Notes: generated by a model not told the origin, from the letters alone. A DNA stretch of 64,000 bases from IMGVR_UViG_3300027899_000001:341017-405016, one strand, 5' to 3'; shown: positions 4,728 to 50,334, counted from the stretch's first letter. A program made the numbers and translations.

Positions 4728-5231
4728 TTATAAATCATTTTCTTTGTGTTTACACCAAGTTAGATATTCATCTTGATCTCTTATCCATTGTAATAATTCT
4801 GGATCAGTAACTTGTTCATGTTCTATTTTAGACCATAATTCGTTATCTCTTTCATTTTTATCATATTGATTAACGAAATATATTTTCTTAATTCCCGCTG
4901 CTATTATATTTTTCAAACATTCACTGCAAGGTTCAAGTATACAATAAAGTTCTGCTTCTTCAATAGCAATTCCATGTTTGGCTGCAAAATTAATAGCATT
5001 CATTTCAGCATGAACCTCATATTTTTTAGACCAATTATGATGGGCTTCTCTATCAGTTAGAAAATTATAATTAGGAAAATGATCACAACAATTTTCAAAT
5101 CCTTTAGGTGTCCCATTTATTCCCGTGGAAATAATTCTTCTATCATGAACAATAAGAGCTCCCACTTGTCTTGAGACACATTTAGATTCTTGTCCAAGTA
5201 AATATGCTGTTTTAAGAAAGAAATGTTTCAT
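4728..5231 (-). CDS. dCMP deaminase
   Basis: SKCVSRQVGA, HAEMNAI, EPCSEC zinc-binding motifs. Confidence 0.92.
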   Translation of the reverse strand: MKHFFLKTAYLLGQESKCVSRQVGALIVHDRRIISTGINGTPKGFENCCDHFPNYNFLTDREAHHNWSKKYEVHAEMNAINFAAKHGIAIEEAELYCILEPCSECLKNIIAAGIKKIYFVNQYDKNERDNELWSKIEHEQVTDPELLQWIRDQDEYLTWCKHKENDL

Positions 5232-5479
5232 TTGAATTCTGCTTCTAAATTTCTTAAATGTTCATTAGTATATTCGTATTCTATTTTATCTTCATAATCA
5301 TAAAGATATATTTTATCTTTACATACTTTTGTTATTTTACACTTAAAATTTTTCCAAGAATAACAATTATATAAATTATCTACAACTCCTGACCAATTAT
5401 ATTTTTTACCTTCAACTAGTTGAAAACCATCATGAGTTACAAATATCTTTTTGGGTTTTTTCTTAAATGGATTTTTCAT
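5228..5479 (-). CDS. Hypothetical protein
   Basis: 83-aa ORF with ATGA-type overlaps on both sides. Confidence 0.6.
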   Translation of the reverse strand: MKNPFKKKPKKIFVTHDGFQLVEGKKYNWSGVVDNLYNCYSWKNFKCKITKVCKDKIYLYDYEDKIEYEYTNEHLRNLEAEFK

Positions 5480-5679
5480 GGTCTTAAGCTTTTTTGTTCA
5501 TTTTCTTCTCCATCGCCATCCATTAAAGTAGCAATCATGTTAATAGATTCAAGAATAGATTGTCTTAACATTTTAATCCAAGTTTCATAATCCTCTACTT
5601 TTGTGATATTAGGACGAATTGTTACGTTTTTTAGATTTTCACAAACAGTTTTAAGCACTTTCTTTTCTAACTTTTCCAT
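5476..5679 (-). CDS. Hypothetical protein
   Basis: 67-aa ORF, first gene after a promoter motif. Confidence 0.6.
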   Translation of the reverse strand: MEKLEKKVLKTVCENLKNVTIRPNITKVEDYETWIKMLRQSILESINMIATLMDGDGEENEQKSLRP

Positions 5680-5765
5680 ATTGTTATTTGTTTATTATAA
5701 TGCTAATATATAAAAAATATGAATACGATGTGATTTTTTGTTGTTAATTTTTTGTTAAAAAAGCA

Positions 5766-5789
5766 AAAGGGAGAATTTCTTCTCCCTTT
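5766..5789 (-). terminator. Intrinsic terminator after Ro60 gene
   Basis: aaagggaga-N6-tctcccttt hairpin followed by a U-rich tail on the minus strand. Confidence 0.75.
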
Positions 5790-5797
5790 CTATTCTA

Positions 5798-7501
5798 TTA
5801 GATTTCAATCTTGTTGATTTCATCTATGATTACCTGTGGGTTTATTTCAACCTGAGGAATCTTTTCGTAGATGTCTTGACCGTAGCCGTAAAGACGGAAT
5901 ACTCTGTTTCCACCCTTTATAGGAGCAGTTGCTGCATATCCGCATACGTTGATGATGTATACGTATGGTGTTCCGAACTTCTTGCAGTATCCTGCATAAG
6001 AATTTTCTACATTGCTGTATCCATCCTGTTCGTCAGAGATGATAAGAATTCTATCGTACTGCTTGTTAGTTCTTTCAAACAACTTGAAGCAAGAACCGAA
6101 ATCTGTACCGTGACCGCAACATCCGTTGTAGGACATGAACTTCTGCTTTAACGTATTGATTGAATCGATTGGGTTCCAACCTACAATCTGTTCAGCAGTA
6201 GAAGCGAAATGGTATACATCTCCACCAACACCCTTTGCAAATGTTGCAGCTACAAGTGCAGCCTTGTCAGCTGGCTTCTTATTGATAGCCTTCTTAGGGT
6301 CACCATTAAGATAAATGCTGGAGTATCCACCTTTCATAGAACCTGATGTATCGAATACAACTGCTGTTCTACCTTCTGGAAGCAAGTTCTGAAGGTTTGG
6401 AATTGACAATTCATATGCTGTTGAAAGTGCCTTTGCAACCTTAGCCAACTGTGTTCCGTTGAATTCAAGTGTCATCACTTCAAGAGCAATGTCAATCTGG
6501 TGTGGCCATACAAGAGACTTACGGATGAATTCCTTTTCAACAAGTAAATCGCACGCCTTGTCAAGAAGAACAGTATCATTGGTCTTAAGAATGTTACGTA
6601 CGTTACGAAGTAATGCAAGGTACCCAATCTTCTTAGTTTCAATAAGTTCCTTGTAGTTTTCAGTCTTAGCTTCATTAAGTTCAACAGTTGCCTGTTCCTT
6701 AGTGATAGTTCCAGCCTTAACCTTTTCAGCTACAACCTTTCCTGCTTCAGTATTCTTATCTTCAACAGTGTTGAACTGCTTAAGAACGCCAAGAACAAGA
6801 GCCTTAAGAGTTGGAAGACCAACATTACCATTTTCAGGTGCATCTAAAAGATATTCATCCTTTTCGAACTTAGTACCCTTAACAGCCTTCAAGTATTCAG
6901 CTTCTGATACAAATACTGTTCCATTTATAGGTGTTTCATGTGGGTGCACTAAGTTAACGATGTCAACAAGGCTTACACCACGTGACTTCATCTGGTACTT
7001 AGCTAACTGATATGCATCTGCATGTTCAATTGCATCCTTGAATCCCTTCTTAATAGCGTTTGGAATTGGTGCTTCTACACCATTCTTAGCCTGGTAACAT
7101 GCAAGAATTTCTGCCATGTCATCAAGACGATAAACGATACCTCCACGATTTTCCTTACGGTCTCTCTTAGAGAAGAATCTCTTAGCGATTTCAGAACCTG
7201 CAAGGTGAGGGATTAATTCTACTGCACCGTAATGAGTAACAGAACGCTGTCCAAATACTGTACGTGCATAGATAAGTGCCTTAGCTGCGAATAATGCATT
7301 CTTCTGCGCAACTCTATTGATAACTTCACGGAATCTCTTTTCACGTTCAGTTTCCTTTTCGTAATAAGTATTATCTAAACCAGTAGATAAAATACCAATT
7401 AATTCATGTTCTGGCTTCTGTGTTAAACCAGTTCCACCCTGTAAAGTTACAGTTTCCTTAACTTCTGGGTTGCTTACTCTCTTTTCATTGTACTTTGACA
7501 T
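5798..7501 (-). CDS. rsr: Ro60-related TROVE + vWA RNA-binding protein
   Basis: TROVE features (YARTVFGQRSV, YQLAKY, LVDIVNLVHP, GYLALLRNVRNI) and vWA MIDAS DTSGSM, GTD, IISDEQ. Confidence 0.92.
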   Translation of the reverse strand: MSKYNEKRVSNPEVKETVTLQGGTGLTQKPEHELIGILSTGLDNTYYEKETEREKRFREVINRVAQKNALFAAKALIYARTVFGQRSVTHYGAVELIPHLAGSEIAKRFFSKRDRKENRGGIVYRLDDMAEILACYQAKNGVEAPIPNAIKKGFKDAIEHADAYQLAKYQMKSRGVSLVDIVNLVHPHETPINGTVFVSEAEYLKAVKGTKFEKDEYLLDAPENGNVGLPTLKALVLGVLKQFNTVEDKNTEAGKVVAEKVKAGTITKEQATVELNEAKTENYKELIETKKIGYLALLRNVRNILKTNDTVLLDKACDLLVEKEFIRKSLVWPHQIDIALEVMTLEFNGTQLAKVAKALSTAYELSIPNLQNLLPEGRTAVVFDTSGSMKGGYSSIYLNGDPKKAINKKPADKAALVAATFAKGVGGDVYHFASTAEQIVGWNPIDSINTLKQKFMSYNGCCGHGTDFGSCFKLFERTNKQYDRILIISDEQDGYSNVENSYAGYCKKFGTPYVYIINVCGYAATAPIKGGNRVFRLYGYGQDIYEKIPQVEINPQVIIDEINKIEI

Positions 7502-7545
7502 AGTGTACCTCCTTTTTTTACTATTAGTTTATACTAAAGAATTAA

Positions 7546-7776
7546 TTAACATATTACTATAAAATGTTTTCTGTTTTCATTATCTTCACACTTAACAGGC
7601 ATGAATCTTTTATCTTCATAATCTTCTCTTGCAACTTGCATCCAACCATTTTCGGTTCCTGCTGGATTGTCTCTATTTGCTACCTCAAGTATTTCTTCAT
7701 CAGTAGCGTCCCATTCTGCGCAAACTTGCATATAACATATGCCTATCATCGGCTGTGAAACTATTACTCTTTCCAT
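7546..7776 (-). CDS. Hypothetical protein, co-transcribed upstream of Ro60
   Basis: 76-aa ORF with MQVC...NPAGTENGW...C...H...C pattern. Confidence 0.7.
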   Translation of the reverse strand: MERVIVSQPMIGICYMQVCAEWDATDEEILEVANRDNPAGTENGWMQVAREDYEDKRFMPVKCEDNENRKHFIVIC

Positions 7777-7795
7777 ATTAAATTTTATTAAAAAT

Positions 7796-7834
7796 AAAAA
7801 AGCCTGAGTAATTTTTTACGATTTCTCAGGCTTT
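7796..7834 (-). terminator. Intrinsic terminator in the leader of the Ro60 operon
   Basis: AAAGCCUGAG...CUCAGGCUUU 10-bp stem followed by UUUAUUUUU on the minus strand. Confidence 0.8.
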
Positions 7835-7878
7835 GCAATATAATCATAAAGTTCAAGTTATGAGCTATGCAAATAAAA

Positions 7879-7955
7879 GTTGAGAAATCTGAGAAGAGTT
7901 TAAATTGAAAATTCTAATAAAGATCGTTCGATGTAACTCTTTCTCTTACTACAAT
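7879..7955 (-). ncRNA. Y-RNA-like element, copy 1 (Ro60 operon leader)
   Basis: UUGUAGUAA-GAGAAAGAGU-UACAUCG...ACUCUUCUC-AGA-UUUCUCAA; ends pair; conserved with three other copies. Confidence 0.65.
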
Positions 7956-8098
7956 CAATTATATTATTATATATAAAGTCAAAAACTCTTTGTTTTTAGA
8001 CTTAGTGTTAAAATTTTGTTAAAGATTTATTTATTAAAATTATAGTGTAAATATAATAAAAATTCTTGACAGAAAAAACTTTTTATGTTAAAATTTTG

Positions 8099-8692
8099 TT
8101 AAAATAATGAAATATTTTTGGTACGATGTAATAATCCATATATTATAAATGCATGACCCATCTTTTTATTTGGATCTGTAATAACATCCATAAGAGATTT
8201 ATTCATCTTAACATGATTGTATCCATCAAAATCTATCAAATAAATATCTCGTTTTTCAGTTTTATATAATTCTAAAAGTTGCTTATATGCTTCGCTTTGT
8301 AATAAAGCTCTTTTATAAATAGGAATGTAAATTTTAATTCTTGCTTGAATATATGATAATTTTTCTCCATCCCAATAACTATATAAAGGTTTTGCATCTC
8401 TACCCATAGGATATCTGTGAGCAAAATTATCATTCCATATTTTTTCAGCCCATTCAAAATATGCTGGAGAAGGATCGCCTTTTTCATCTACAAATTCTTT
8501 ATATACCTTTGATGCTTGCCAGGCGTTTTCTACATTCTTTGCATAATATCCTTTATACAAATGCCCGCCCGGAAGAACAAAAGGAGATAAACCTTGAGTC
8601 CAATTTCCTGAACCTGCTCTTGAAGTTGTATTAATTACTACTGCGCCCTCAGGTATCTCATACCTTTTAGCGTATGATTCTACGTATAACAT
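8099..8692 (-). CDS. Conserved hypothetical protein (DUF6939-like, possibly NADAR-related)
   Basis: TTSR...LSPF...NVENAWQASKVY...YIQARIKIYIPIY...GHA pattern; family assignment from memory. Confidence 0.55.
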   Translation of the reverse strand: MLYVESYAKRYEIPEGAVVINTTSRAGSGNWTQGLSPFVLPGGHLYKGYYAKNVENAWQASKVYKEFVDEKGDPSPAYFEWAEKIWNDNFAHRYPMGRDAKPLYSYWDGEKLSYIQARIKIYIPIYKRALLQSEAYKQLLELYKTEKRDIYLIDFDGYNHVKMNKSLMDVITDPNKKMGHAFIIYGLLHRTKNISLF

Positions 8693-8883
8693 AGTGTAAA
8701 TATAATAAAAAATTCTGAATTGAAAATATTTATGTGTTAAAATTTTGTTAAAATGATGAAACTAAACTTTATAGTTAATATATAAATTATATAACCTTGT
8801 ACTTGGGGGTTTAGTGTTTGAAAGAACATTCGAGTTGGAGAAATACCAACGAATAAATTCTCAAATATAAAATAACATAAGGA

Positions 8884-9753
8884 ATGAAAATAAATTACTC
8901 AACTCAAAGGGTAACTGTGCCCACTGTATACGTGACCAAAGGTCGCCAAAGAGTAAAACAGTATGATAACACAATCTATCTTAAAAATGGAGACGAATTC
9001 GAAATAGAATTATTCAATCCATTACAATCTAAAGTTTTAGCGAAAATTGAACTCAACGGAAAGTATCTTGGTGCTGGAATAGTTTTACGTCCAGGTGAAA
9101 GAATGTTTCTTGAAAGATACATCGAAGAGTCCAGAAAATTCATGTTTCAAACATATGAAGTTGATGGTGGTGATACTAATGTTCAAGAAGCTATTAAACT
9201 TAATGGAGTATTAGAGGTTAAATTTTATAAAGAAACTGCACCTTCACAACCATATTACAGAAGTTCTACTATAACTTACACAACCAATCCAAGTTGGACA
9301 GTAACACCTACTTATACACATTATAATACAACAATAGGATATTCTGGTGTAAAAAGTTCAAAAGGAGACATAGAAAATCCTGGTGTTGTTTTTGGTAATG
9401 CTACTACTTTATCATGTTCTGTGGATAATACAAAATCATATGTAGATAGTATGCCCATTGGAGGTGAAGGATTAGGATTTGCGGGATGCGCTGATTTTTC
9501 AAGAGACTTTGCTCCACAAGAACAAACAATAGAAACTGGAAGAGTAGAAAAAGGTTCAAAATCAGATCAAGAATTTTCTACAGATAATACGCAATTTGAT
9601 GTTTATTATAGTTGGAGAAGTGTTTGGAAAATTCTTCCAGAATCTCAAAAGCCACTTATGTCTGAAGACTTAAAAGTATTTTGTACAAATTGTGGAGCTA
9701 AAAGAAAAAAATCTTCTCATAAATTTTGCCCAAACTGTGGCAACCAATTTTAA
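8884..9753 (+). CDS. Hypothetical protein with C-terminal zinc ribbon
   Basis: 289 aa, ends CTNC...FCPNCG. Confidence 0.8.
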   Translation: MKINYSTQRVTVPTVYVTKGRQRVKQYDNTIYLKNGDEFEIELFNPLQSKVLAKIELNGKYLGAGIVLRPGERMFLERYIEESRKFMFQTYEVDGGDTNVQEAIKLNGVLEVKFYKETAPSQPYYRSSTITYTTNPSWTVTPTYTHYNTTIGYSGVKSSKGDIENPGVVFGNATTLSCSVDNTKSYVDSMPIGGEGLGFAGCADFSRDFAPQEQTIETGRVEKGSKSDQEFSTDNTQFDVYYSWRSVWKILPESQKPLMSEDLKVFCTNCGAKRKKSSHKFCPNCGNQF

Positions 9754-9787
9754 TTATTAACTAAACACAAGGTTATATAAAAAACTA

Positions 9788-9811
9788 AAGAGGACTTTAA
9801 GTCCTCTTTTT
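9788..9811. terminator. Bidirectional terminator between convergent genes
   Basis: aaagaggac-ttaa-like loop-gtcctcttt with A and T tracts on either side. Confidence 0.75.
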
Positions 9812-10137
9812 TATGAATATAATTCATCAATTTTATTTTGAATATTAGATTTTGGACATAATCCTACTTGATGCCAAATATTACCGCCATCCTTAAAAAA
9901 TATCAATGTGGGAATACTTCGTATACCAAATAATTTAGTAACTTCATGACTTTCATCTACGTTACATTTAACAACTTCTATTTTTTGGTTTTCTTCTGAA
10001 AGTTCTTCCATAATTGGACCTAATACTCTACAAGGTCCACACCATTCTGCCCAAAAATCAACTATTATAGATTTTCCCGAATCTATAAGAATTTCTTTAT
10101 AATTTTTATCAGTTATTTCTCTCATATTATAATTCAT
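9811..10137 (-). CDS. trxA: Thioredoxin
   Basis: VDFWAEWCGPC, IRSIPT. Confidence 0.95.
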   Translation of the reverse strand: MNYNMREITDKNYKEILIDSGKSIIVDFWAEWCGPCRVLGPIMEELSEENQKIEVVKCNVDESHEVTKLFGIRSIPTLIFFKDGGNIWHQVGLCPKSNIQNKIDELYS

Positions 10138-12813: not shown

Positions 12814-12910
12814 GTGTATAAATGTTTAGTTAATAAAAAATTTATATTTATATATATGTTAAAAGTTTTATATTTTGATGTAAACAAAATGATATTTGAT
12901 GTAAAATTTG

Positions 12911-12983
12911 TCCCTCTAGAGAGATTCGAACTCTCGACACGCGGGATTAGAAGCCGCTGGTCTGACCACTGACCTATAGAGGG
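12911..12983 (-). tRNA. tRNA with anticodon CUA (amber suppressor)
   Basis: 73-nt canonical cloverleaf CCCUCUA UA GGUC AGUGGUCA GACC A GCGGC UUCUAAU CCCGC GUGUC GAGAG UUCGAAU CUCUC UAGAGGG A; standard numbering puts CUA at 34-36; C31:C39 mismatch. Confidence 0.8.
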
Positions 12984-45611: not shown

Positions 45612-45673
45612 CTTCTTTTTTATTTTATTTATTCCAGATTAGAATGAATAAATAAATAAAATAAATCGCGAAT

Positions 45674-48600
45674 ATGCAATTTTCAAATTTCTCTAGATTA
45701 GATGAAGGATTAGCAATCACATTATATAACACGGTTCCTATTGAAAATGTAGGAACTCTTAAGTATTTTACAGATAATTCGCAAGGTACTTTTACAAAAA
45801 AAGAATTTTGTTGGTCATTTAATAATGAGTATTGGTCTGCATGGGAAACACTTACTCAAAATGGTATATCTTCAATAAACACATATGGCAATTATTATTT
45901 ATTTGTAAAAATTAGATATACATTAAGTTCTGCTGGTTCGGGAACAGTTAGCACATTTAATCTTAATTATCTTAATGGAAGTGCAACTTCTACATCTCCT
46001 GCATATTTTCACGGTGATATTGAATCACGAGATACATCTGCAGTTATTATTCATGATATTATACAATCGTTTGATGTAATTCCAATTGTTGATGCATGCA
46101 CATTAAGTGGATATGTAGGTAATTATTATTTAGATAGATCACACCATAAAGGTCAACAGCCTATTACTTCTATTACGGGATTACAAAGCGCTTTGAATAC
46201 TATAACAACTACTCAGGGAATACAAGGTATTCAGGGAATAATAGGAACTCAAGGAATTGAAGGGTTACAGGGAATTCAGGGTATTCAAGGAATAGGAACA
46301 CCTGGAACTCAAGGTTCTCAAGGAACTCAGGGAACACAAGGAACTCAGGGAGCACAAGGCGCTCAAGGAACTCAGGGAACACAAGGAACTCAGGGAAGAC
46401 AAGGTATTCAGGGTTCTCAGGGGACCCAAGGAACTCAAGGAACACAGGGTACTCAAGGAACTCAAGGTGCTCAAGGAATACAGGGAACACAAGGAACACA
46501 AGGTACTCAGGGAATTCAAGGAACACAAGGAACACAAGGGACTCAGGGAACACAAGGCACTCAAGGAATTCAAGGAATTCAAGGAATTCAAGGAATGTAC
46601 GGAATTCAAGGAATACAAGGAATATCTTTTAGCGATGCATCTTTATCACTTTATGTTCCTTATACTGGAGCAACTCAAGATTTATCATTAAATAATCATT
46701 CTATAAAATCAATCGATGCAATTATATTTAATCAAAATATAACTATGCCTCGTCAAAATGGACAATTATTTTATGATACATCAAATTATACTCTTGGACT
46801 TCATACAGCTGATGATGTAACACTTCAACTTGGTCAAGAACAAGTAATGGTAGTACATAATGATACAGGAAACACTATTTATAATGGTGAAGTAGTTTAT
46901 ATTACAGGCACATATAATGTTGATATTCCTAATGTTGATTTAGCTAAAGCTGATATATTCAGTACCGCTGCTGCTATTGGTGTTGCAACACAAAATATTA
47001 ATCCAGGAGCAATAGGATTAATAACAACTAATGGCATTGTACATGATGTAAGTACTGGAGGATATACACCAGGACAATTTTTATATTTATCAGATATAAG
47101 TGCTGGAGGTCTTACGCCAACAGCCGTTATATCACCGAGTATATGGGTAAGAGTTGCTAAAGTTATACAAGCAAGTGATACTGCTGGTTCTATATTAGTT
47201 TATGTACAAATAGGAAGATCAATTACAACATTATATGATGTTGGAATAATTAATCCTCAATTAGATGAAACTCTAAAATGGAATGGAAGCAGATGGATAA
47301 ATTCTACAGGATCTACTGTATCTGCAGGTGCAGGTGTAATTTATTTTTTATCTGATGAAATTTCTGATATATCTACATATGAATCTGCATCTCACGTTCC
47401 TTCTGCTAATCCTGAAGTAATAGAATATAAAGTAATTAATTCTAGTACGCATTTAGTAATTGATAATTATGCATCAGAACCTAGTAGTGGTTTAGGAATA
47501 TCTTTAATAGATGGAGGAATATGGGAATTTAATACATTTGCATCTGTTGCAGATTCATTATCAGCAACATCAGAAATAAAAACATTTGTATATAAAAGAG
47601 ATTATTTAGGCGTTGAAACTTCTTTATTTAGTGTAACAACTGGAGATATAAATTCAGAAACTGTAATGCTTTATACGACTACAAGTGTACAGCCATCATT
47701 TGTAGTTAACTCAAGTGATAGACTTATATTTAGATATGAAGCATGGACTGATTCTTCTATTGATGTTTCAATTAATCTTTATCATTGTGGAAATACTAAT
47801 TATACTCATATACATACACCACTTGCAACACGTCATAATGATTTGGCAGGATTACAGGGGGGATTACCTGATCAATTTTTTCATGTTAATAGAGCACAAC
47901 TTACTGTAATAGAAAATACCTCTGGAGTTAATACAGGAAATCAAGATCTTAGCCCTTATGCTGTTACAGTAAATGTTAATTCATCAATAAACGATGTTAG
48001 ATCAACTTATATACCAGATTCATCTTTGGGCAATGAATCATTTTATTATGATGTATCTAATTATTTACAATCAAGTGCGGGTTCAGGCGTAGGTATTGTT
48101 GGAAAATGGAAATACGAAAATATAATATCTGATGCTGATCCCGGAACAGGATATTTTAGATTAAATAATGCAGATCCTTCATTAGCAACATATGCATATA
48201 TAAATAATTTTAATTTAGGTGGTGCAGATGTAAAAAATATATTATTAAAACTTAAAGTTGGTGACAATTTTTATGTTCAAAAATTACCAGATTCTGCTGA
48301 ATATGCTACATATGTATTAACTGCTGATGCTTCAAGTGCAACAAGTTATATAAAATTAGCTGTTAATTCTATTAATTCATCAGGCTCATCTTTTAGTGAT
48401 AAAAAGGAATTTGGTTTTATATTTTTATTTACAAGTTCGACAGTAGGAGCTCAAGGGATTCAAGGTGTACAAGGAACTCAAGGAACACAGGGTACTCAAG
48501 GGACTCAAGGAACTCAAGGTGTTCAAGGGACTCAGGGAACTCAGGGAATTCAAGGTACAGATGGAATTCAAGGTATTCAAGGTACTCAAGGAACACAAGG

Positions 48601-49561
48601 AACACAGGGAACTCAAGGAATTCAAGGTATAGATGGAATTCAAGGTATTCAAGGTACTCAAGGGATTCAAGGTGCCCAAGGAACTCAAGGCGCTCAAGGT
48701 ATAGATGGAATTCAAGGTGTTCAAGGTACTCAAGGAACACAGGGAACTCAAGGTACTCAAGGAACACAGGGAACTCAAGGAATTCAAGGTATAGATGGAA
48801 TTCAAGGTATTCAAGGTACTCAAGGGACGCAAGGTGTCCAAGGAACACAGGGAACTCAAGGAACACAAGGTGCTCAAGGAACGCAAGGAACGCAGGGAAT
48901 TCAAGGAGTTCAAGGAGTTCAAGGAGTTCAAGGAGTTCAGGGAAGACAAGGAACTCAGGGTACACAAGGAACTCAAGGTGTTCAAGGAAGACAAGGAATT
49001 CAAGGAATACAAGGATTAGATGGATTATATGCTGCTCAAGGAGTTCAAGGTACTCAAGGAATTCAAGGTCCTTCAGATGGTGCACAAGGTACTCAAGGAA
49101 TTCAAGGAATTCAAGGTATTCAAGGTGTTCAAGGTGTTCAAGGTGTTCAAGGTGTTCAAGGAAGACAAGGAACTCAAGGAACTCAAGGAAGACAAGGAGC
49201 TACATCAGATGCACGTGTTAAAAAGAATGTTCGTCCATACGTTGATGGTATTAATATAATAGACCAAATAGAACCTGTTATATATCAATGGAATGGTTTA
49301 TTTGGAACTCCAACAGATGATAAAGATGTTGTAGGAGTAATTGGAAATGACCTTGAAAGAATACTTCCTACTGCAGTTTATAGAATTAAAGGAAAATTAG
49401 TTGAAGATGGTGTTGAATCTGAAGTAGTTCAAATTGATTATCAACCAGTTATTTTAGCTCTAGTAAATGCAGTAAAAGAATTAAGTAAAAAAGTATATAA
49501 TCTTGAAAAAGAAATGAGACTTTCAAAAGGAGCTCAAGGTGTACAGGATTTATTAAAATAA
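45674..49561 (+). CDS. Collagen-like tail fibre with C-terminal intramolecular chaperone (peptidase S74-like)
   Basis: Two (G-X-Q)n tracts; SDARVKKNV...P.IYQWN...GVIG.DLE.ILP.AV...LVNAVKEL chaperone signature. Confidence 0.88.
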   Translation: MQFSNFSRLDEGLAITLYNTVPIENVGTLKYFTDNSQGTFTKKEFCWSFNNEYWSAWETLTQNGISSINTYGNYYLFVKIRYTLSSAGSGTVSTFNLNYLNGSATSTSPAYFHGDIESRDTSAVIIHDIIQSFDVIPIVDACTLSGYVGNYYLDRSHHKGQQPITSITGLQSALNTITTTQGIQGIQGIIGTQGIEGLQGIQGIQGIGTPGTQGSQGTQGTQGTQGAQGAQGTQGTQGTQGRQGIQGSQGTQGTQGTQGTQGTQGAQGIQGTQGTQGTQGIQGTQGTQGTQGTQGTQGIQGIQGIQGMYGIQGIQGISFSDASLSLYVPYTGATQDLSLNNHSIKSIDAIIFNQNITMPRQNGQLFYDTSNYTLGLHTADDVTLQLGQEQVMVVHNDTGNTIYNGEVVYITGTYNVDIPNVDLAKADIFSTAAAIGVATQNINPGAIGLITTNGIVHDVSTGGYTPGQFLYLSDISAGGLTPTAVISPSIWVRVAKVIQASDTAGSILVYVQIGRSITTLYDVGIINPQLDETLKWNGSRWINSTGSTVSAGAGVIYFLSDEISDISTYESASHVPSANPEVIEYKVINSSTHLVIDNYASEPSSGLGISLIDGGIWEFNTFASVADSLSATSEIKTFVYKRDYLGVETSLFSVTTGDINSETVMLYTTTSVQPSFVVNSSDRLIFRYEAWTDSSIDVSINLYHCGNTNYTHIHTPLATRHNDLAGLQGGLPDQFFHVNRAQLTVIENTSGVNTGNQDLSPYAVTVNVNSSINDVRSTYIPDSSLGNESFYYDVSNYLQSSAGSGVGIVGKWKYENIISDADPGTGYFRLNNADPSLATYAYINNFNLGGADVKNILLKLKVGDNFYVQKLPDSAEYATYVLTADASSATSYIKLAVNSINSSGSSFSDKKEFGFIFLFTSSTVGAQGIQGVQGTQGTQGTQGTQGTQGVQGTQGTQGIQGTDGIQGIQGTQGTQGTQGTQGIQGIDGIQGIQGTQGIQGAQGTQGAQGIDGIQGVQGTQGTQGTQGTQGTQGTQGIQGIDGIQGIQGTQGTQGVQGTQGTQGTQGAQGTQGTQGIQGVQGVQGVQGVQGRQGTQGTQGTQGVQGRQGIQGIQGLDGLYAAQGVQGTQGIQGPSDGAQGTQGIQGIQGIQGVQGVQGVQGVQGRQGTQGTQGRQGATSDARVKKNVRPYVDGINIIDQIEPVIYQWNGLFGTPTDDKDVVGVIGNDLERILPTAVYRIKGKLVEDGVESEVVQIDYQPVILALVNAVKELSKKVYNLEKEMRLSKGAQGVQDLLK

Positions 49562-49570
49562 ATAAAAACT

Positions 49571-49846
49571 ATGAAATTATTCGGAAAAGAAATTGGAAGA
49601 GATAAACTATTACATTTTGTTTCAGGATTTATTCTTGGAATATTAGGAATATGCATAACATTAATATTTACTTCAAAAATAATTTTATTAACTTTTTTTG
49701 GTATAGCTCTTCCAACATTTGTAGGAATATTAAAAGAGTTACGTGATAGTTATGGAGCAGGACAAGTAGAAATGCTAGATGCTGCATTTACTATATTTGG
49801 AGGTATGTTAGCGACCATATTGATTTTATTATTTATTTTATTATAA
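49571..49846 (+). CDS. Small membrane protein (DKLLHF motif)
   Basis: DKLLHF...GILKELRD...D...T..GG with TM segments. Confidence 0.7.
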   Translation: MKLFGKEIGRDKLLHFVSGFILGILGICITLIFTSKIILLTFFGIALPTFVGILKELRDSYGAGQVEMLDAAFTIFGGMLATILILLFILL

Positions 49847-49902
49847 GAAATTTTAATATCATGCGAGAGAAAATATAAATATTGATAAATATAATAAAAA
49901 CT

Positions 49903-50334
49903 ATGTGTTTATTTAGAAGCAGTTCAAGTTCACAAGGAGCACAAGGTCGTCAAGGTGCGCAGGGCACACAAGGTATACAAGGAATTCAAGGTATTAAAGG
50001 TGCTCAGGGAATTTCGGGAATTTCAGGAACTACTGGCTTACAAGGTATTCAAGGATCGATTGGAGACGGTGTTACAAAATTATACGTTGACGGTTCATTG
50101 AATTCAAGAGATGCTTCAATAAATAGTATTTTTAATATCATAAATAATAAACTTGATGCAACTTCTATATTTTATACAAAAATACAATCAGATTCTTTAT
50201 ATTATAAAATAGTTGCAAAGCCACTTAGTTCAACTTCTCCGGGACTTGTTGGATATATAGCTTTTGATTCAAGTTATTTATATGCATGCGTATCAACAAA
50301 TAAGTGGACAAGAACAGTAATGTCTGCTTGGTAA
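49903..50334 (+). CDS. Short collagen-like virion protein
   Basis: G-X-Q tract; C-terminal P.SS.SPG..G.IAFD..YLY.C...NKW.R fibre-type domain; start reassigned to ATG 49903. Confidence 0.75.
   Translation: MCLFRSSSSSQGAQGRQGAQGTQGIQGIQGIKGAQGISGISGTTGLQGIQGSIGDGVTKLYVDGSLNSRDASINSIFNIINNKLDATSIFYTKIQSDSLYYKIVAKPLSSTSPGLVGYIAFDSSYLYACVSTNKWTRTVMSAW

What the first reader, a model, noticed from the sequence alone, without database searches (positions are those of the whole stretch)
7796..7990. Y-like element positioned as a Ro60-sensing attenuator of its own operon
Seen: on the minus strand a TATATAA promoter motif (about 7967-7975) is followed immediately by Y-like copy 1, then a strong intrinsic terminator (7834-7796), then the 76-aa ORF and Ro60. 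The conserved 3' strand of the element (GAUUUCUCA, 7889-7881) is perfectly complementary to the 5' arm of the terminator (UGAGAAAUC, 7828-7820). Inference: free Ro60 binds and stabilises the Y fold so the terminator forms. When Ro60 is titrated away, the 9-bp antiterminator allows readthrough. This would be autogenous control through a Y-RNA mimic.
Basis: partly seen in the sequence, partly recalled or inferred. Interest (0 to 1): 0.8.

Follow-up and report, generated by a model that had tools for sequence, protein, structure and literature searches.

The report
Y-RNA gene doubling as Ro60 attenuator
In a 405-kb uncultured phage, a small Y-type RNA gene just upstream of the phage's Ro60 gene ends in a terminator that can be blocked by part of the Y RNA, an arrangement kept with compensating base changes in about 28 of 31 related phage loci, so it looks like a switch that balances Y RNA against Ro60.

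Summary
On the minus strand, a conserved promoter motif is followed by a Y-type RNA module (7958-7876), a spacer hairpin and an intrinsic terminator (7831-7796). Then come a 76-aa ORF and a TROVE/Ro60 gene. GAUUUCUCA (7889-7881) is exactly complementary to UGAGAAAUC (7828-7820).

The pairing is not chance. About 28 of 31 related phage loci keep it, with compensatory changes at four or more positions. It is specific to the terminator that follows the Ro60-linked Y copy. It extends into the terminator loop and into an unpaired toehold of the Y fold.

Folding of nascent transcripts predicts the antiterminator helix at P about 0.8 before the terminator's 3' arm appears. The full-length RNA prefers the Y fold plus terminator.

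The element belongs to a phage Y-RNA family. Some of its paralogues carry a YrlA-style tRNA-like insert.

What is not shown: that Ro60 is the ligand, or which way it would push the switch. A second Ro60-specific leader hairpin, next to the ribosome-binding site, repeats the core of the Y closing helix.

Verdict: a real, conserved attenuator-like switch. Ro60 sensing is plausible but inferred.

The parts
8048..8102 (-). Upstream promoter module P1: TTAACA-N5-TTAACA, about 30 nt, then TATATTTA. This resembles the Bacteroidota -7 element TAnnTTTG.
   Evidence: The same composite motif occurs only at 8751-8697, 8102-8048 and 26771-26716, against 0 expected. The TTAACAAAATTTTAACA repeat occurs 15 times against 4.0 expected.
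7960..8022 (-). Second promoter-like module directly before the Y RNA: TTAACAAAATTTTAACA (8022-8006), then TTTTTGAC, then TTATATATAAT (7976-7966).
   Evidence: Read directly. The same arrangement lies directly before the Y module in L006, L009 and L041. Promoter function is inferred from conservation only.
7876..7958 (-). Y-type RNA module (copy 1). Closing-helix 5' strand at 7957-7946: UUG, bulged U, AG, U.U mismatch, AA. Inner stem. Conserved GUUACAUCGAA. Closing-helix 3' strand at 7887-7877.
   Evidence: Covariance model R1: 61.2 bits, E 3.5e-11. Across 38 modules 86% of cells are paired and the closing helix is 90.5% paired, with compensatory changes.
7881..7889 (-). Region 2: GAUUUCUCA. 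It is the 3' strand of the Y closing helix plus two unpaired toehold bases, and serves as the antiterminator strand.
7832..7873 (-). Spacer hairpin (UUUGCA...UGCAAA) between the Y module and the terminator. In the antiterminated fold it is enclosed by the 2:3 helix.
   Evidence: Predicted folds. The UUUGCA/UGCAAA ends recur in L004, L005, L010, L036, L043, L064, L065 and L067.
7796..7831 (-). Intrinsic terminator: stem 7831-7821 / 7812-7802, loop, T-run 7801-7796. Region 3 (UGAGAAAUC, 7828-7820) covers the upper 5' arm and the first loop base.
   Evidence: The terminator helix is 87% paired, with 6 of 7 pairs covarying across 21 loci.
7546..7776 (-). 76-aa ORF of unknown function between the terminator and Ro60.
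   Evidence: No Pfam or PHROG hit. Relatives carry either this family or a different 64-75-aa family at this place.
7518..7543 (-). Ro60-specific leader hairpin AAUUCUU-[UAGU AUAA ACUA]-A-U-AGUAA, ending 5 nt before the Shine-Dalgarno GGAGG (7512-7508). It repeats the core of the Y closing helix: bulged U, A-U, G-C, U.U, A-U.
   Evidence: Present in 33 of 38 distinct Ro60 leaders. The stem covaries: 6.1 bp against 4.1 +/- 0.23 when halves are swapped. There are 30 instances at Ro60 starts against 3 elsewhere in 688 kb.
5798..7501 (-). Ro60 (TROVE-domain) gene, 567 aa.
5765..5790 (-). Terminator closing the unit after Ro60.

Best explanation
The stretch 7958-7796 is a short Y-RNA gene whose intrinsic terminator also acts as a conditional attenuator for the genes downstream (the 76-aa ORF and Ro60).

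Proposed mechanism:
1. Transcription starts at the conserved promoter motifs just upstream.
2. The Y module folds. Its 3' strand, region 2 (GAUUUCUCA), first closes the conserved bulged helix with the 5' strand, region 1.
3. About 55 nt later the terminator's 5' arm, region 3 (UGAGAAAUC), emerges. It is a perfect complement of region 2.
4. Starting from two unpaired toehold bases, region 3 displaces region 1 and forms a 9-bp antiterminator around the spacer hairpin. The terminator's 3' arm (region 4) then cannot pair in time, and RNA polymerase reads through into the ORF and Ro60.
5. If a protein holds the Y closing helix shut, region 3 stays free, the terminator forms, and the product is a roughly 160-nt Y RNA.

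The most likely protein is the phage Ro60, because the closing helix is the part shared by all Y modules of this family. That would give negative feedback which matches Ro60 synthesis to the pool of unbound Y RNA.

Shown here: the anatomy, the conservation and covariation of the alternative helix, its restriction to the Ro60-linked copy, and its predicted dominance in the nascent transcript.
Inferred: that readthrough is regulated, that Ro60 is the ligand, and the direction of its effect.

My sub-probabilities:
- A functional terminator/antiterminator switch: about 0.7.
- Ro60 as effector with this polarity: about 0.4.
For: Anatomy, confirmed by reading and folding.

Linkage to Ro60:
- All 22 units of this type lie upstream of a same-strand Ro60 gene, 39-1496 nt away.
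- In L006, L027 and L075 the terminator is only 39-61 nt from the start codon.

Specificity of the complementarity:
- Own terminator arm -9.6 kcal/mol against -3.4 +/- 2.4 for 1114 other terminator-like arms.
- Ro60-linked copies -9.4 against -5.8 for Y copies in tRNA arrays, Mann-Whitney p 1.9e-5.

Covariation:
- Own against swapped partners: 0 of 20000 permutations as low.
- Fixed-column helix 82.8% paired; pair 90-157 is U-A in 13 loci and C-G in 4.
- In the register table, column 85 is A-U 4, G-C 5, U-A 1; column 84 is G-C 3, A-U 3, C-G 1; column 92 is A-U 10, G-C 1.
- Column 90 also covaries with its Y-helix partner, A-U 17 and G-C 4.

Held-out loci, found later with the covariance model:
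- 6 of 8 keep the pairing.
- L139 has a perfect 9 bp, ACGUUUCUC/GAGAAACGU, with new compensations. L134 has 7 bp.

The pairing runs past the terminator stem into its loop. In the window it is perfect where the terminator itself has an A.A mismatch. Selection therefore acts on the 2:3 helix itself.

Folding:
- In transcripts cut before the terminator's 3' arm, the mean probability that region 2 pairs with region 3 is 0.81 (above 0.5 in 19 of 20 loci), and the closing helix is at 0.015.
- In full-length RNA, 2:3 pairing is at 0.002 and the closing helix at 0.55.
- The terminated state is on average 7.5 kcal/mol more stable. The direct-path barrier from the antiterminated state has a median of 11.1 kcal/mol, and 14.2 in the window.

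No recognisable promoter lies between 7796 and 7501.

The closing helix is the most conserved part of all 38 modules. It resembles in kind the bulged helix that Ro60 binds in animal Y RNAs (PMC12135203, PMC4201824).
Against: - There is no experimental evidence. Ro60 binding to this RNA is an analogy.
- In bacterial YrlA RNAs the proposed Ro60 motif is GNCGAAN0-1G on the 5' strand (PMC4201824). The nearest thing here (UUACAUCGAACG) lies in the apical part, not in the closing helix.
- Xenopus Ro60 contacts mainly the 5' strand and separates the helix (PMC4201824, PMC12135203). That would favour the antiterminator rather than block it, giving the opposite polarity.
- Three loci lack the complementarity: L008, L080 and L089. 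L089 is the closest relative of the window phage.
- The compensatory events are few, and some are clade-level, such as the four CCC/GGG loci.
- Up to 1.5 kb of other genes, including homing endonucleases, can lie between the terminator and Ro60.
- Ro60 has its own conserved leader hairpin. An unrecognised phage promoter or a processing site could therefore uncouple it.
- The barrier estimate is a heuristic upper bound, and the truncated-fold test assumes equilibrium.
Confidence: 0.5

Rival explanations
1. A fixed-ratio leaky terminator. The competing 2:3 helix simply lowers termination efficiency to a constant fraction. One promoter then makes many Y RNAs and a few Ro60 mRNAs, and nothing is sensed.
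For: Everything that supports the alternative helix fits this equally well. No ligand-binding evidence exists.
Against: A weak terminator would give partial readthrough without keeping a covarying helix, a toehold and an enclosing spacer hairpin. The competitor strand is exactly the 3' strand of the most conserved, presumably protein-bound, helix of the Y family.
Confidence: 0.22
2. A real switch with another effector or the opposite polarity. For example, Ro60 binds the 5' strand and opens the closing helix, promoting readthrough (positive feedback). Or another phage or host factor, or polymerase pausing, sets the outcome.
For: Ro60 is reported to contact mainly the 5' strand of Y RNA and to separate the helix (PMC4201824, PMC12135203). 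The YrlA-type CGAA-like motif here lies outside the closing helix.
Against: The antiterminator is predicted to form spontaneously in the nascent RNA. A factor is therefore needed to prevent it, not to promote it. No other candidate is consistently encoded in the unit, because the small ORFs differ between loci.
Confidence: 0.15
3. An ordinary stand-alone Y-RNA gene with an ordinary terminator. The complementarity is a by-product, for example a terminator hairpin that descends from or mimics the Y closing helix. Ro60 is transcribed independently.
For: The terminator's 3' arm (AUUACUCA) resembles the Y 3' strand (AUUUCUCA). Ro60 has its own conserved leader element. Three loci lack the complementarity. 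Known phage and bacterial Y RNA genes commonly lie upstream of Ro60 with no reported attenuation (PMC4201824, PMC12135203).
Against: The complementarity extends into the terminator loop and into unpaired Y positions, and is better than the terminator's own pairing there. The terminator lacks the bulged U and the U.U mismatch that a mimic should keep. In three loci only 39-61 nt separate the terminator from the Ro60 start, leaving no room for a promoter of the known types. Lineage-specific covariation is also against it.
Confidence: 0.1

Closest known systems
Bacterial and phage Y RNAs bound by Ro60/Rsr: YrlA, YrlB, D. radiodurans Yrn1/2, Thermus phage phiLo Yrl1/Yrl2 (PMC4201824, PMC12135203)
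   Same: - It is encoded just upstream of a Ro60 orthologue on the same strand.
- Its stem is formed by the 5' and 3' ends and contains a conserved bulged helix.
- Several copies occur per genome.
- Some paralogues in related phages carry a T-arm, closed acceptor-like stem and D-arm insert in the YrlA order.
- It has a UCGAA-like motif on the 5' side.
   Different: - The conserved sequences differ: UGUAGUAAG...GUUACUUCG...AUUUCUCA.
- No Rfam family matches.
- The copy at 7958-7876 has no tRNA-like domain, so it is YrlB-like.
- No terminator/antiterminator arrangement has been described for any Y RNA in the papers I could search.
Protein-dependent transcription attenuation in which a gene product binds its own leader. 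Examples are the Bacillus ribosomal-protein leaders for L20 and L10, PyrR and TRAP (from my own knowledge, not checked here).
   Same: A promoter-proximal leader with an intrinsic terminator and a mutually exclusive antiterminator. The binding site for the product overlaps one strand of the alternative helix. The feedback is negative.
   Different: Here the leader is not merely a mimic of the protein's RNA partner. It is a member of that RNA family, and the terminated transcript would itself be the partner. The effector has not been demonstrated.
Attenuator- or riboswitch-derived small RNAs with a second life in trans. Examples are Listeria SreA/SreB and rnTrpL (from my own knowledge).
   Same: Premature termination yields a stable, functional small RNA, while readthrough yields the mRNA.
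   Different: Those sense metabolites or translation. This one would sense the occupancy of an RNA-binding protein.

Membership tests
Y RNA (Ro60-associated non-coding RNA) | Encoded next to a Ro60/TROVE gene | tested here: met
   The window copy lies 375 nt upstream of the Ro60 start. All 22 terminated units are upstream of a same-strand Ro60 gene. The further loci agree.
Y RNA (Ro60-associated non-coding RNA) | Long stem formed by the 5' and 3' ends, containing a conserved bulged helix | tested here: met
   The closing helix is 90.5-98% paired, with an invariant bulged U, a U.U mismatch and compensatory changes.
Y RNA (Ro60-associated non-coding RNA) | Ro60-contact motif: GGUCCGA in animals, GNCGAAN0-1G in YrlA/YrlB (PMC4201824) | tested here: inconclusive
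   UCG is invariant within GUUACUUCG. The window copy reads AUCGAACG, which fits NCGAANG but not the first G. In addition, the motif lies apical to the inner stem.
Y RNA (Ro60-associated non-coding RNA) | Physical binding to Ro60 | not testable with these tools
   Needs a gel-shift assay or co-immunoprecipitation.
YrlA subfamily | tRNA-like domain (T-arm, closed acceptor-like stem, D-arm) inside the Y stem | tested here: not met
   The copy at 7958-7876 has only a short apical stem-loop. Paralogues with the same closing stem in related phages (L014, L048, L012, L100) do have it. The family is therefore YrlA-related, but this copy is not a YrlA.
Rfam Y_RNA or any other Rfam family | Match to a curated covariance model | tested here: not met
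   No hit at E <= 10 in 5000-10000. No hit at gathering score in the window. No hit at E <= 0.1 in loci that hold the tRNA-like versions.
Transcription attenuator (terminator/antiterminator leader) | Intrinsic terminator between a promoter and the regulated gene, with no intervening promoter | tested here: inconclusive
   The terminator is real. None of the phage's recognisable promoter modules, and no sigma-70-like site, lies on the minus strand between 7796 and 7501. Unknown phage promoter types cannot be excluded.
Transcription attenuator (terminator/antiterminator leader) | Conserved helix mutually exclusive with the terminator, supported by covariation | tested here: met
Transcription attenuator (terminator/antiterminator leader) | The alternative helix forms first during transcription | tested here: met
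   This is an equilibrium proxy only. P(2:3) averages 0.81 in transcripts truncated before the 3' arm. The barrier to the terminated state has a median of about 11 kcal/mol.
Transcription attenuator (terminator/antiterminator leader) | Readthrough responds to a ligand | not testable with these tools
   Needs in vitro transcription or reporter assays.
Ro60 / TROVE protein (for the downstream gene) | TROVE domain and full-length similarity to Ro60 proteins | tested here: met
   Pfam TROVE E 4.7e-9. PHROG 850 over residues 12-563, E 2e-28. Thermus phage Ro60 structures 9KOP/9L5Y, E 5e-14.

The most novel reading that the evidence does not exclude
The phage uses its own Y RNA as a sensor of free Ro60 at two levels.

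- Co-transcriptionally, Ro60 clamps the Y closing helix, and transcription then terminates before the Ro60 gene. Each transcription event therefore yields either a Y RNA or a Ro60 mRNA, according to whether free Ro60 is present.
- At translation, a circularly permuted copy of the same bulged helix sits 5 nt upstream of the Ro60 Shine-Dalgarno sequence and acts as an operator.

This would be the first autoregulatory circuit described for any Ro60, and a natural device that balances the two parts of a ribonucleoprotein.
Probability: 0.3. Interest if true: 0.85.

Novelty: new variant of a known kind. Interest (0 to 1): 0.7.

Why it matters
How cells and viruses keep Ro60 and its Y RNAs in step is not known, and neither is what phage Ro60 particles are for. 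This locus gives a concrete and cheap experiment. A roughly 500-bp template, one purified protein and a handful of compensatory mutants would show whether Ro60 controls its own synthesis by reading the fold of its partner RNA. It also defines a new, sizeable family of phage Y RNAs with three forms: short copies, tRNA-array copies and tRNA-like copies. That family has a clearly delimited conserved helix, which is the obvious candidate for the Ro60 binding site.

Tried and rejected
- Rfam, at gathering and permissive thresholds, on the window and on loci with the tRNA-like versions: only tRNAs and noise.
- BLAST of the region against GenBank phages: only weak matches within the DUF6939 gene upstream of the Y unit (query positions 161-671) to huge uncultured phages, and no annotation.
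- RNAalifold on the MAFFT alignment of Ro60 leaders gave no structure, because the variable hairpin was misaligned. I replaced it with anchored pair counting. My first anchoring regex there was off by one base and gave zero pairs.
- My first automatic register anchoring of the terminator arm picked the wrong GAG in several loci. It was only partly fixed, where the GAGAGAC loci L004, L013 and L064 are still shown in the wrong register. Their true pairing is 7-8 bp including one G.U.
- The fixed-column count undercounts positions 84-85, because MAFFT placed gaps differently in different loci.
- The scan of bacterial and archaeal genomes for the 5' motif returned 81 stretches. Only 6 are real modules by the covariance model, mostly on short contigs that look like mis-binned phage, so no host could be assigned.
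- Idea rejected: the terminator hairpin as a Ro60-site mimic. It lacks the bulged U and the U.U mismatch, and the complementarity runs into the loop.
- Idea rejected: a 1:4 pairing (AGUAA/UUACU) completing a four-strand alternative. It is not conserved in L005 or L010.
- Idea rejected: RNase III processing of the 2:3 helix. At 7-9 bp it is too short.
- The Ro60 leader hairpin is unlikely to be a promoter, because its stem covaries as RNA.

Full report
WHAT IS THERE

All coordinates are on the minus strand.

The window matches, at 100% over the Ro60 locus, a 405,016-bp uncultured phage contig. It is AT-rich and has 14 tRNA genes on the same strand. Downstream of a DUF6939 gene (8692-8099) the order is as follows.
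- A promoter module, TTAACA-N5-TTAACA-N30-TATATTTA, at 8102-8048. This module recurs only three times in the window, against none expected.
- A second TTAACA repeat (8022-8006), then TTATATATAAT (7976-7966).
- The Y-like module (7958-7876).
- A spacer hairpin (7873-7832).
- A terminator: stem 7831-7802 and T-run 7801-7796.
- A 76-aa ORF (7776-7546).
- A conserved hairpin next to a GGAGG ribosome-binding site (7543-7508).
- A 567-aa TROVE/Ro60 gene (7501-5798).
- A terminator (5790-5765).

The 9-mer GATTTCTCA occurs only twice in 64 kb: once in the Y 3' strand and once, as the reverse complement, in the terminator's 5' arm.

IS THE ELEMENT A Y RNA?

The window holds exactly three copies: 7958-7876, 19249-19166 and 19087-19012. 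The last two flank a tRNA-Gln gene inside the tRNA array.

A pattern scan of viral contigs, plus scans for Ro60 relatives, gave dozens more. All share these features.
- A closing helix made by the two ends: 5' UUG, bulged U, AG, U.U mismatch, AA, paired with 3' UUUCUCAA.
- An inner stem.
- An invariant GUUACUUCG.

On 38 modules the structure is 86% paired. The closing helix is 90.5% paired, with compensatory changes, for example A-U in 34 and G-C in 4 at one pair.

The modules occur in three settings.
- Type A: a short module followed by a spacer and a terminator, upstream of Ro60.
- Type B: a short module inside a tRNA array.
- Type C: the same closing stem enclosing a T-arm, a 7-8-bp stem closed by a loop, and a D-arm, in that order.

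The type C order is the architecture described for bacterial YrlA RNAs (PMC4201824). Phage Y-like RNAs upstream of a phage Ro60 gene are also known from Thermus phage phiLo (PMC12135203).

No Rfam model recognises any of these modules. The YrlA motif GNCGAAN0-1G is only partly matched.

I therefore file the element as a member of a new phage branch of Y RNAs, of the short YrlB-like form. Binding to Ro60 is untested.

IS THE COMPLEMENTARITY MORE THAN CHANCE?

Every one of the 22 terminated units lies upstream of a same-strand Ro60 gene. The distance is 39-1496 nt, and in three loci only 39-61 nt separate the terminator from the start codon.

Specificity:
- The Y 3' strand pairs with its own terminator 5' arm at -9.6 kcal/mol on average.
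- For 1114 other terminator-like arms from the same contigs the figure is -3.4 +/- 2.4.
- For whatever lies downstream of the Y copies in tRNA arrays it is -5.8, Mann-Whitney p 1.9e-5.

Swapping partners among loci weakens the pairing in every one of 20000 permutations. Relatedness inflates that figure, so I also looked for separate compensatory events.

Compensatory events, written as Y 3' strand / terminator arm:
- UUUCUC/GAGAAA against UUUCCC/GGGAAA. The partner in the Y closing helix also changes, from A to G.
- AUUUC/GAAAU against GUUUC/GAAAC against UUUUC/GAAGA.
- GGUUUC/GAAACC.
- CUCG/CGAG.

Loci found only afterwards with the covariance model serve as a held-out set.
- 6 of 8 keep the pairing.
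- Of the two new units from mis-binned MAG contigs, L139 has a perfect 9 bp, ACGUUUCUC/GAGAAACGU, with yet other compensations. L134 has 7 bp.
- L008, L080 and L089 are exceptions.

Two details argue that selection acts on this helix itself and that it is not a side effect of hairpin similarity.
- It runs 1-4 nt into the terminator loop.
- In the window it is perfect where the terminator stem has an A.A mismatch.

It also uses positions 84-85 of the alignment. These are unpaired in the Y fold and would serve as a toehold for strand invasion.

HOW IT MOST LIKELY WORKS

I folded each unit twice.
- Cut just before the terminator's 3' arm, the ensemble is dominated by the 2:3 helix. The mean probability is 0.81, and it is above 0.5 in 19 of 20 loci. 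The Y closing helix is open (0.015), while the inner stem and the spacer hairpin stay intact.
- At full length the equilibrium flips to the Y fold plus terminator, with 2:3 at 0.002.

The terminated state is more stable by 7.5 kcal/mol on average. The heuristic direct-path barrier from the antiterminated state has a median of about 11 kcal/mol, and 14.2 in the window. By a rough Arrhenius estimate of mine that means seconds, which is long against the time a polymerase spends on a U-tract.

The default outcome should therefore be readthrough. Anything that keeps the closing helix shut should give termination.

That helix is the family's most conserved feature. It is also the counterpart of the bulged helix bound by Ro60 in animal Y RNAs, so Ro60 is the natural candidate.

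It makes biological sense as a balancing device. With free Ro60 present, each round of transcription yields a Y RNA. With Ro60 all bound, transcription continues into the Ro60 gene.

WHAT WEAKENS IT

- Nothing here shows binding.
- Published work says Ro60 contacts mainly the 5' strand and pries the helix apart. That could reverse the polarity.
- The switch might set a fixed ratio with no sensing at all.
- Unknown phage promoters cannot be excluded.
- Other genes, including GIY-YIG homing endonucleases, can lie between the terminator and Ro60 in relatives.
- The closest relative (L089) lacks the pairing.

A SECOND ELEMENT

Directly upstream of the Ro60 ribosome-binding site lies AAUUCUU-[hairpin]-A-U-AGUAA.
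- It is present in 33 of 38 distinct Ro60 leaders.
- Its stem covaries: 6.1 bp against 4.1 +/- 0.23 when halves are swapped.
- It is found essentially nowhere else in 688 kb: 30 instances at Ro60 starts against 3 elsewhere, and 2 of those 3 are Ro60-related.

Drawn as a stem-loop, it reproduces the core of the Y closing helix: a helix, a bulged U, then A-U, G-C, U.U, A-U. The difference is that the 'outer' side is closed by a loop. This is my reading of the sequences. It is a candidate translational operator or processing site.

One point against a strict mimic: in the clade whose Y helix has G-C at the first pair, the leader keeps A-U.

COMPARISON AND NOVELTY

Y RNA genes beside Ro60 genes are known, in phages too. 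Leaders that sense their own gene product through terminator/antiterminator alternatives are also known; the ribosomal-protein leaders, PyrR and TRAP come from my own knowledge.

I found no report of a Y RNA acting as an attenuator, or of Ro60 autoregulation.

The case is therefore a new variant of a known kind, with unusually good comparative support for a finding made by eye in one sequence.

Noticed in passing
window 7518-7543 (-), and the Ro60 leaders in L003-L009 and L061-L089: A Ro60-specific leader hairpin, AAUUCUU-[covarying stem]-AUAGUAA, ends 5 nt before the Shine-Dalgarno sequence. It repeats the bulged-U core of the Y closing helix in circularly permuted form. It is a candidate translational operator or processing site.
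   Followed up: partly
window 19249-19166 and 19087-19012 (-): Two further Y modules flank tRNA-Gln(CUG) inside the tRNA array. They would be released by tRNA processing rather than by a terminator. They lack the downstream complementarity.
   Followed up: yes
window about 19008-18925 and 18915-18865 (-): Two tRNA-like sequences that neither ARAGORN nor Rfam calls. One has an acceptor stem and a GGTTCGAATCC T-arm but an odd anticodon region. The other is a short molecule with acceptor, D and T arms and no anticodon arm.
   Followed up: no
L014:372-516 (-), L048:6320-6466 (+), L012 about 6705-6867 (-), L100: Related phages carry Y modules with an inserted tRNA-like domain (T-arm, closed acceptor-like stem, D-arm), as in bacterial YrlA. 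No Rfam family detects them.
   Followed up: partly
window 12910-12983 (-): A tRNA with anticodon CTA, which ARAGORN labels Pyl. That is an amber-suppressor type and hints at stop-codon reassignment in this phage.
   Followed up: no
window 8751-8697, 8102-8048, 26771-26716 (-), plus looser copies: A recurrent promoter-like module: a TTAACA direct repeat 11 bp apart, followed about 30 nt later by TATATTTA. In relatives the last element reads TATATTTG, the Bacteroidota -7 consensus, which hints at a Bacteroidota host.
   Followed up: partly
L003 2201-3000; L004, L007, L009, L013, L043 upstream of Ro60: GIY-YIG homing-endonuclease genes are inserted between the Y/terminator unit and Ro60 in several relatives. 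L003 also carries a duplicated leader hairpin with a truncated Ro60 start.
   Followed up: no
L005 2735-2950, L023 about 600-800, L045, L088 (just upstream of the Ro60 leader hairpin): A GC-rich stretch of about 200-270 nt with a conserved 3' end (AAGAGTAAAG..ACGTGAGGG..GGAT). It is absent from the window and has no Rfam match, and may be another structured RNA.
   Followed up: partly
type-A loci, just after the terminator (e.g. L005 2520-2735, L007, L010, L013, L072): A conserved 64-75-aa ORF family (..IVLSTIE..GKD..FWK..YH.DEVT..GK.WYEY.VKFDG..) follows the terminator in most relatives. The window, L003, L085 and L089 instead have the unrelated 'MKRV.IT.PMIGICYM' type of ORF. Neither has a Pfam or PHROG match.
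   Followed up: partly
window 46200-50000 (+), inside the 1298-aa ORF 45665-49558: Long runs of 9-nt periodic repeats in a Gly/Gln/Thr-rich giant ORF. These may be collagen-like repeats of a fibre protein.
   Followed up: no
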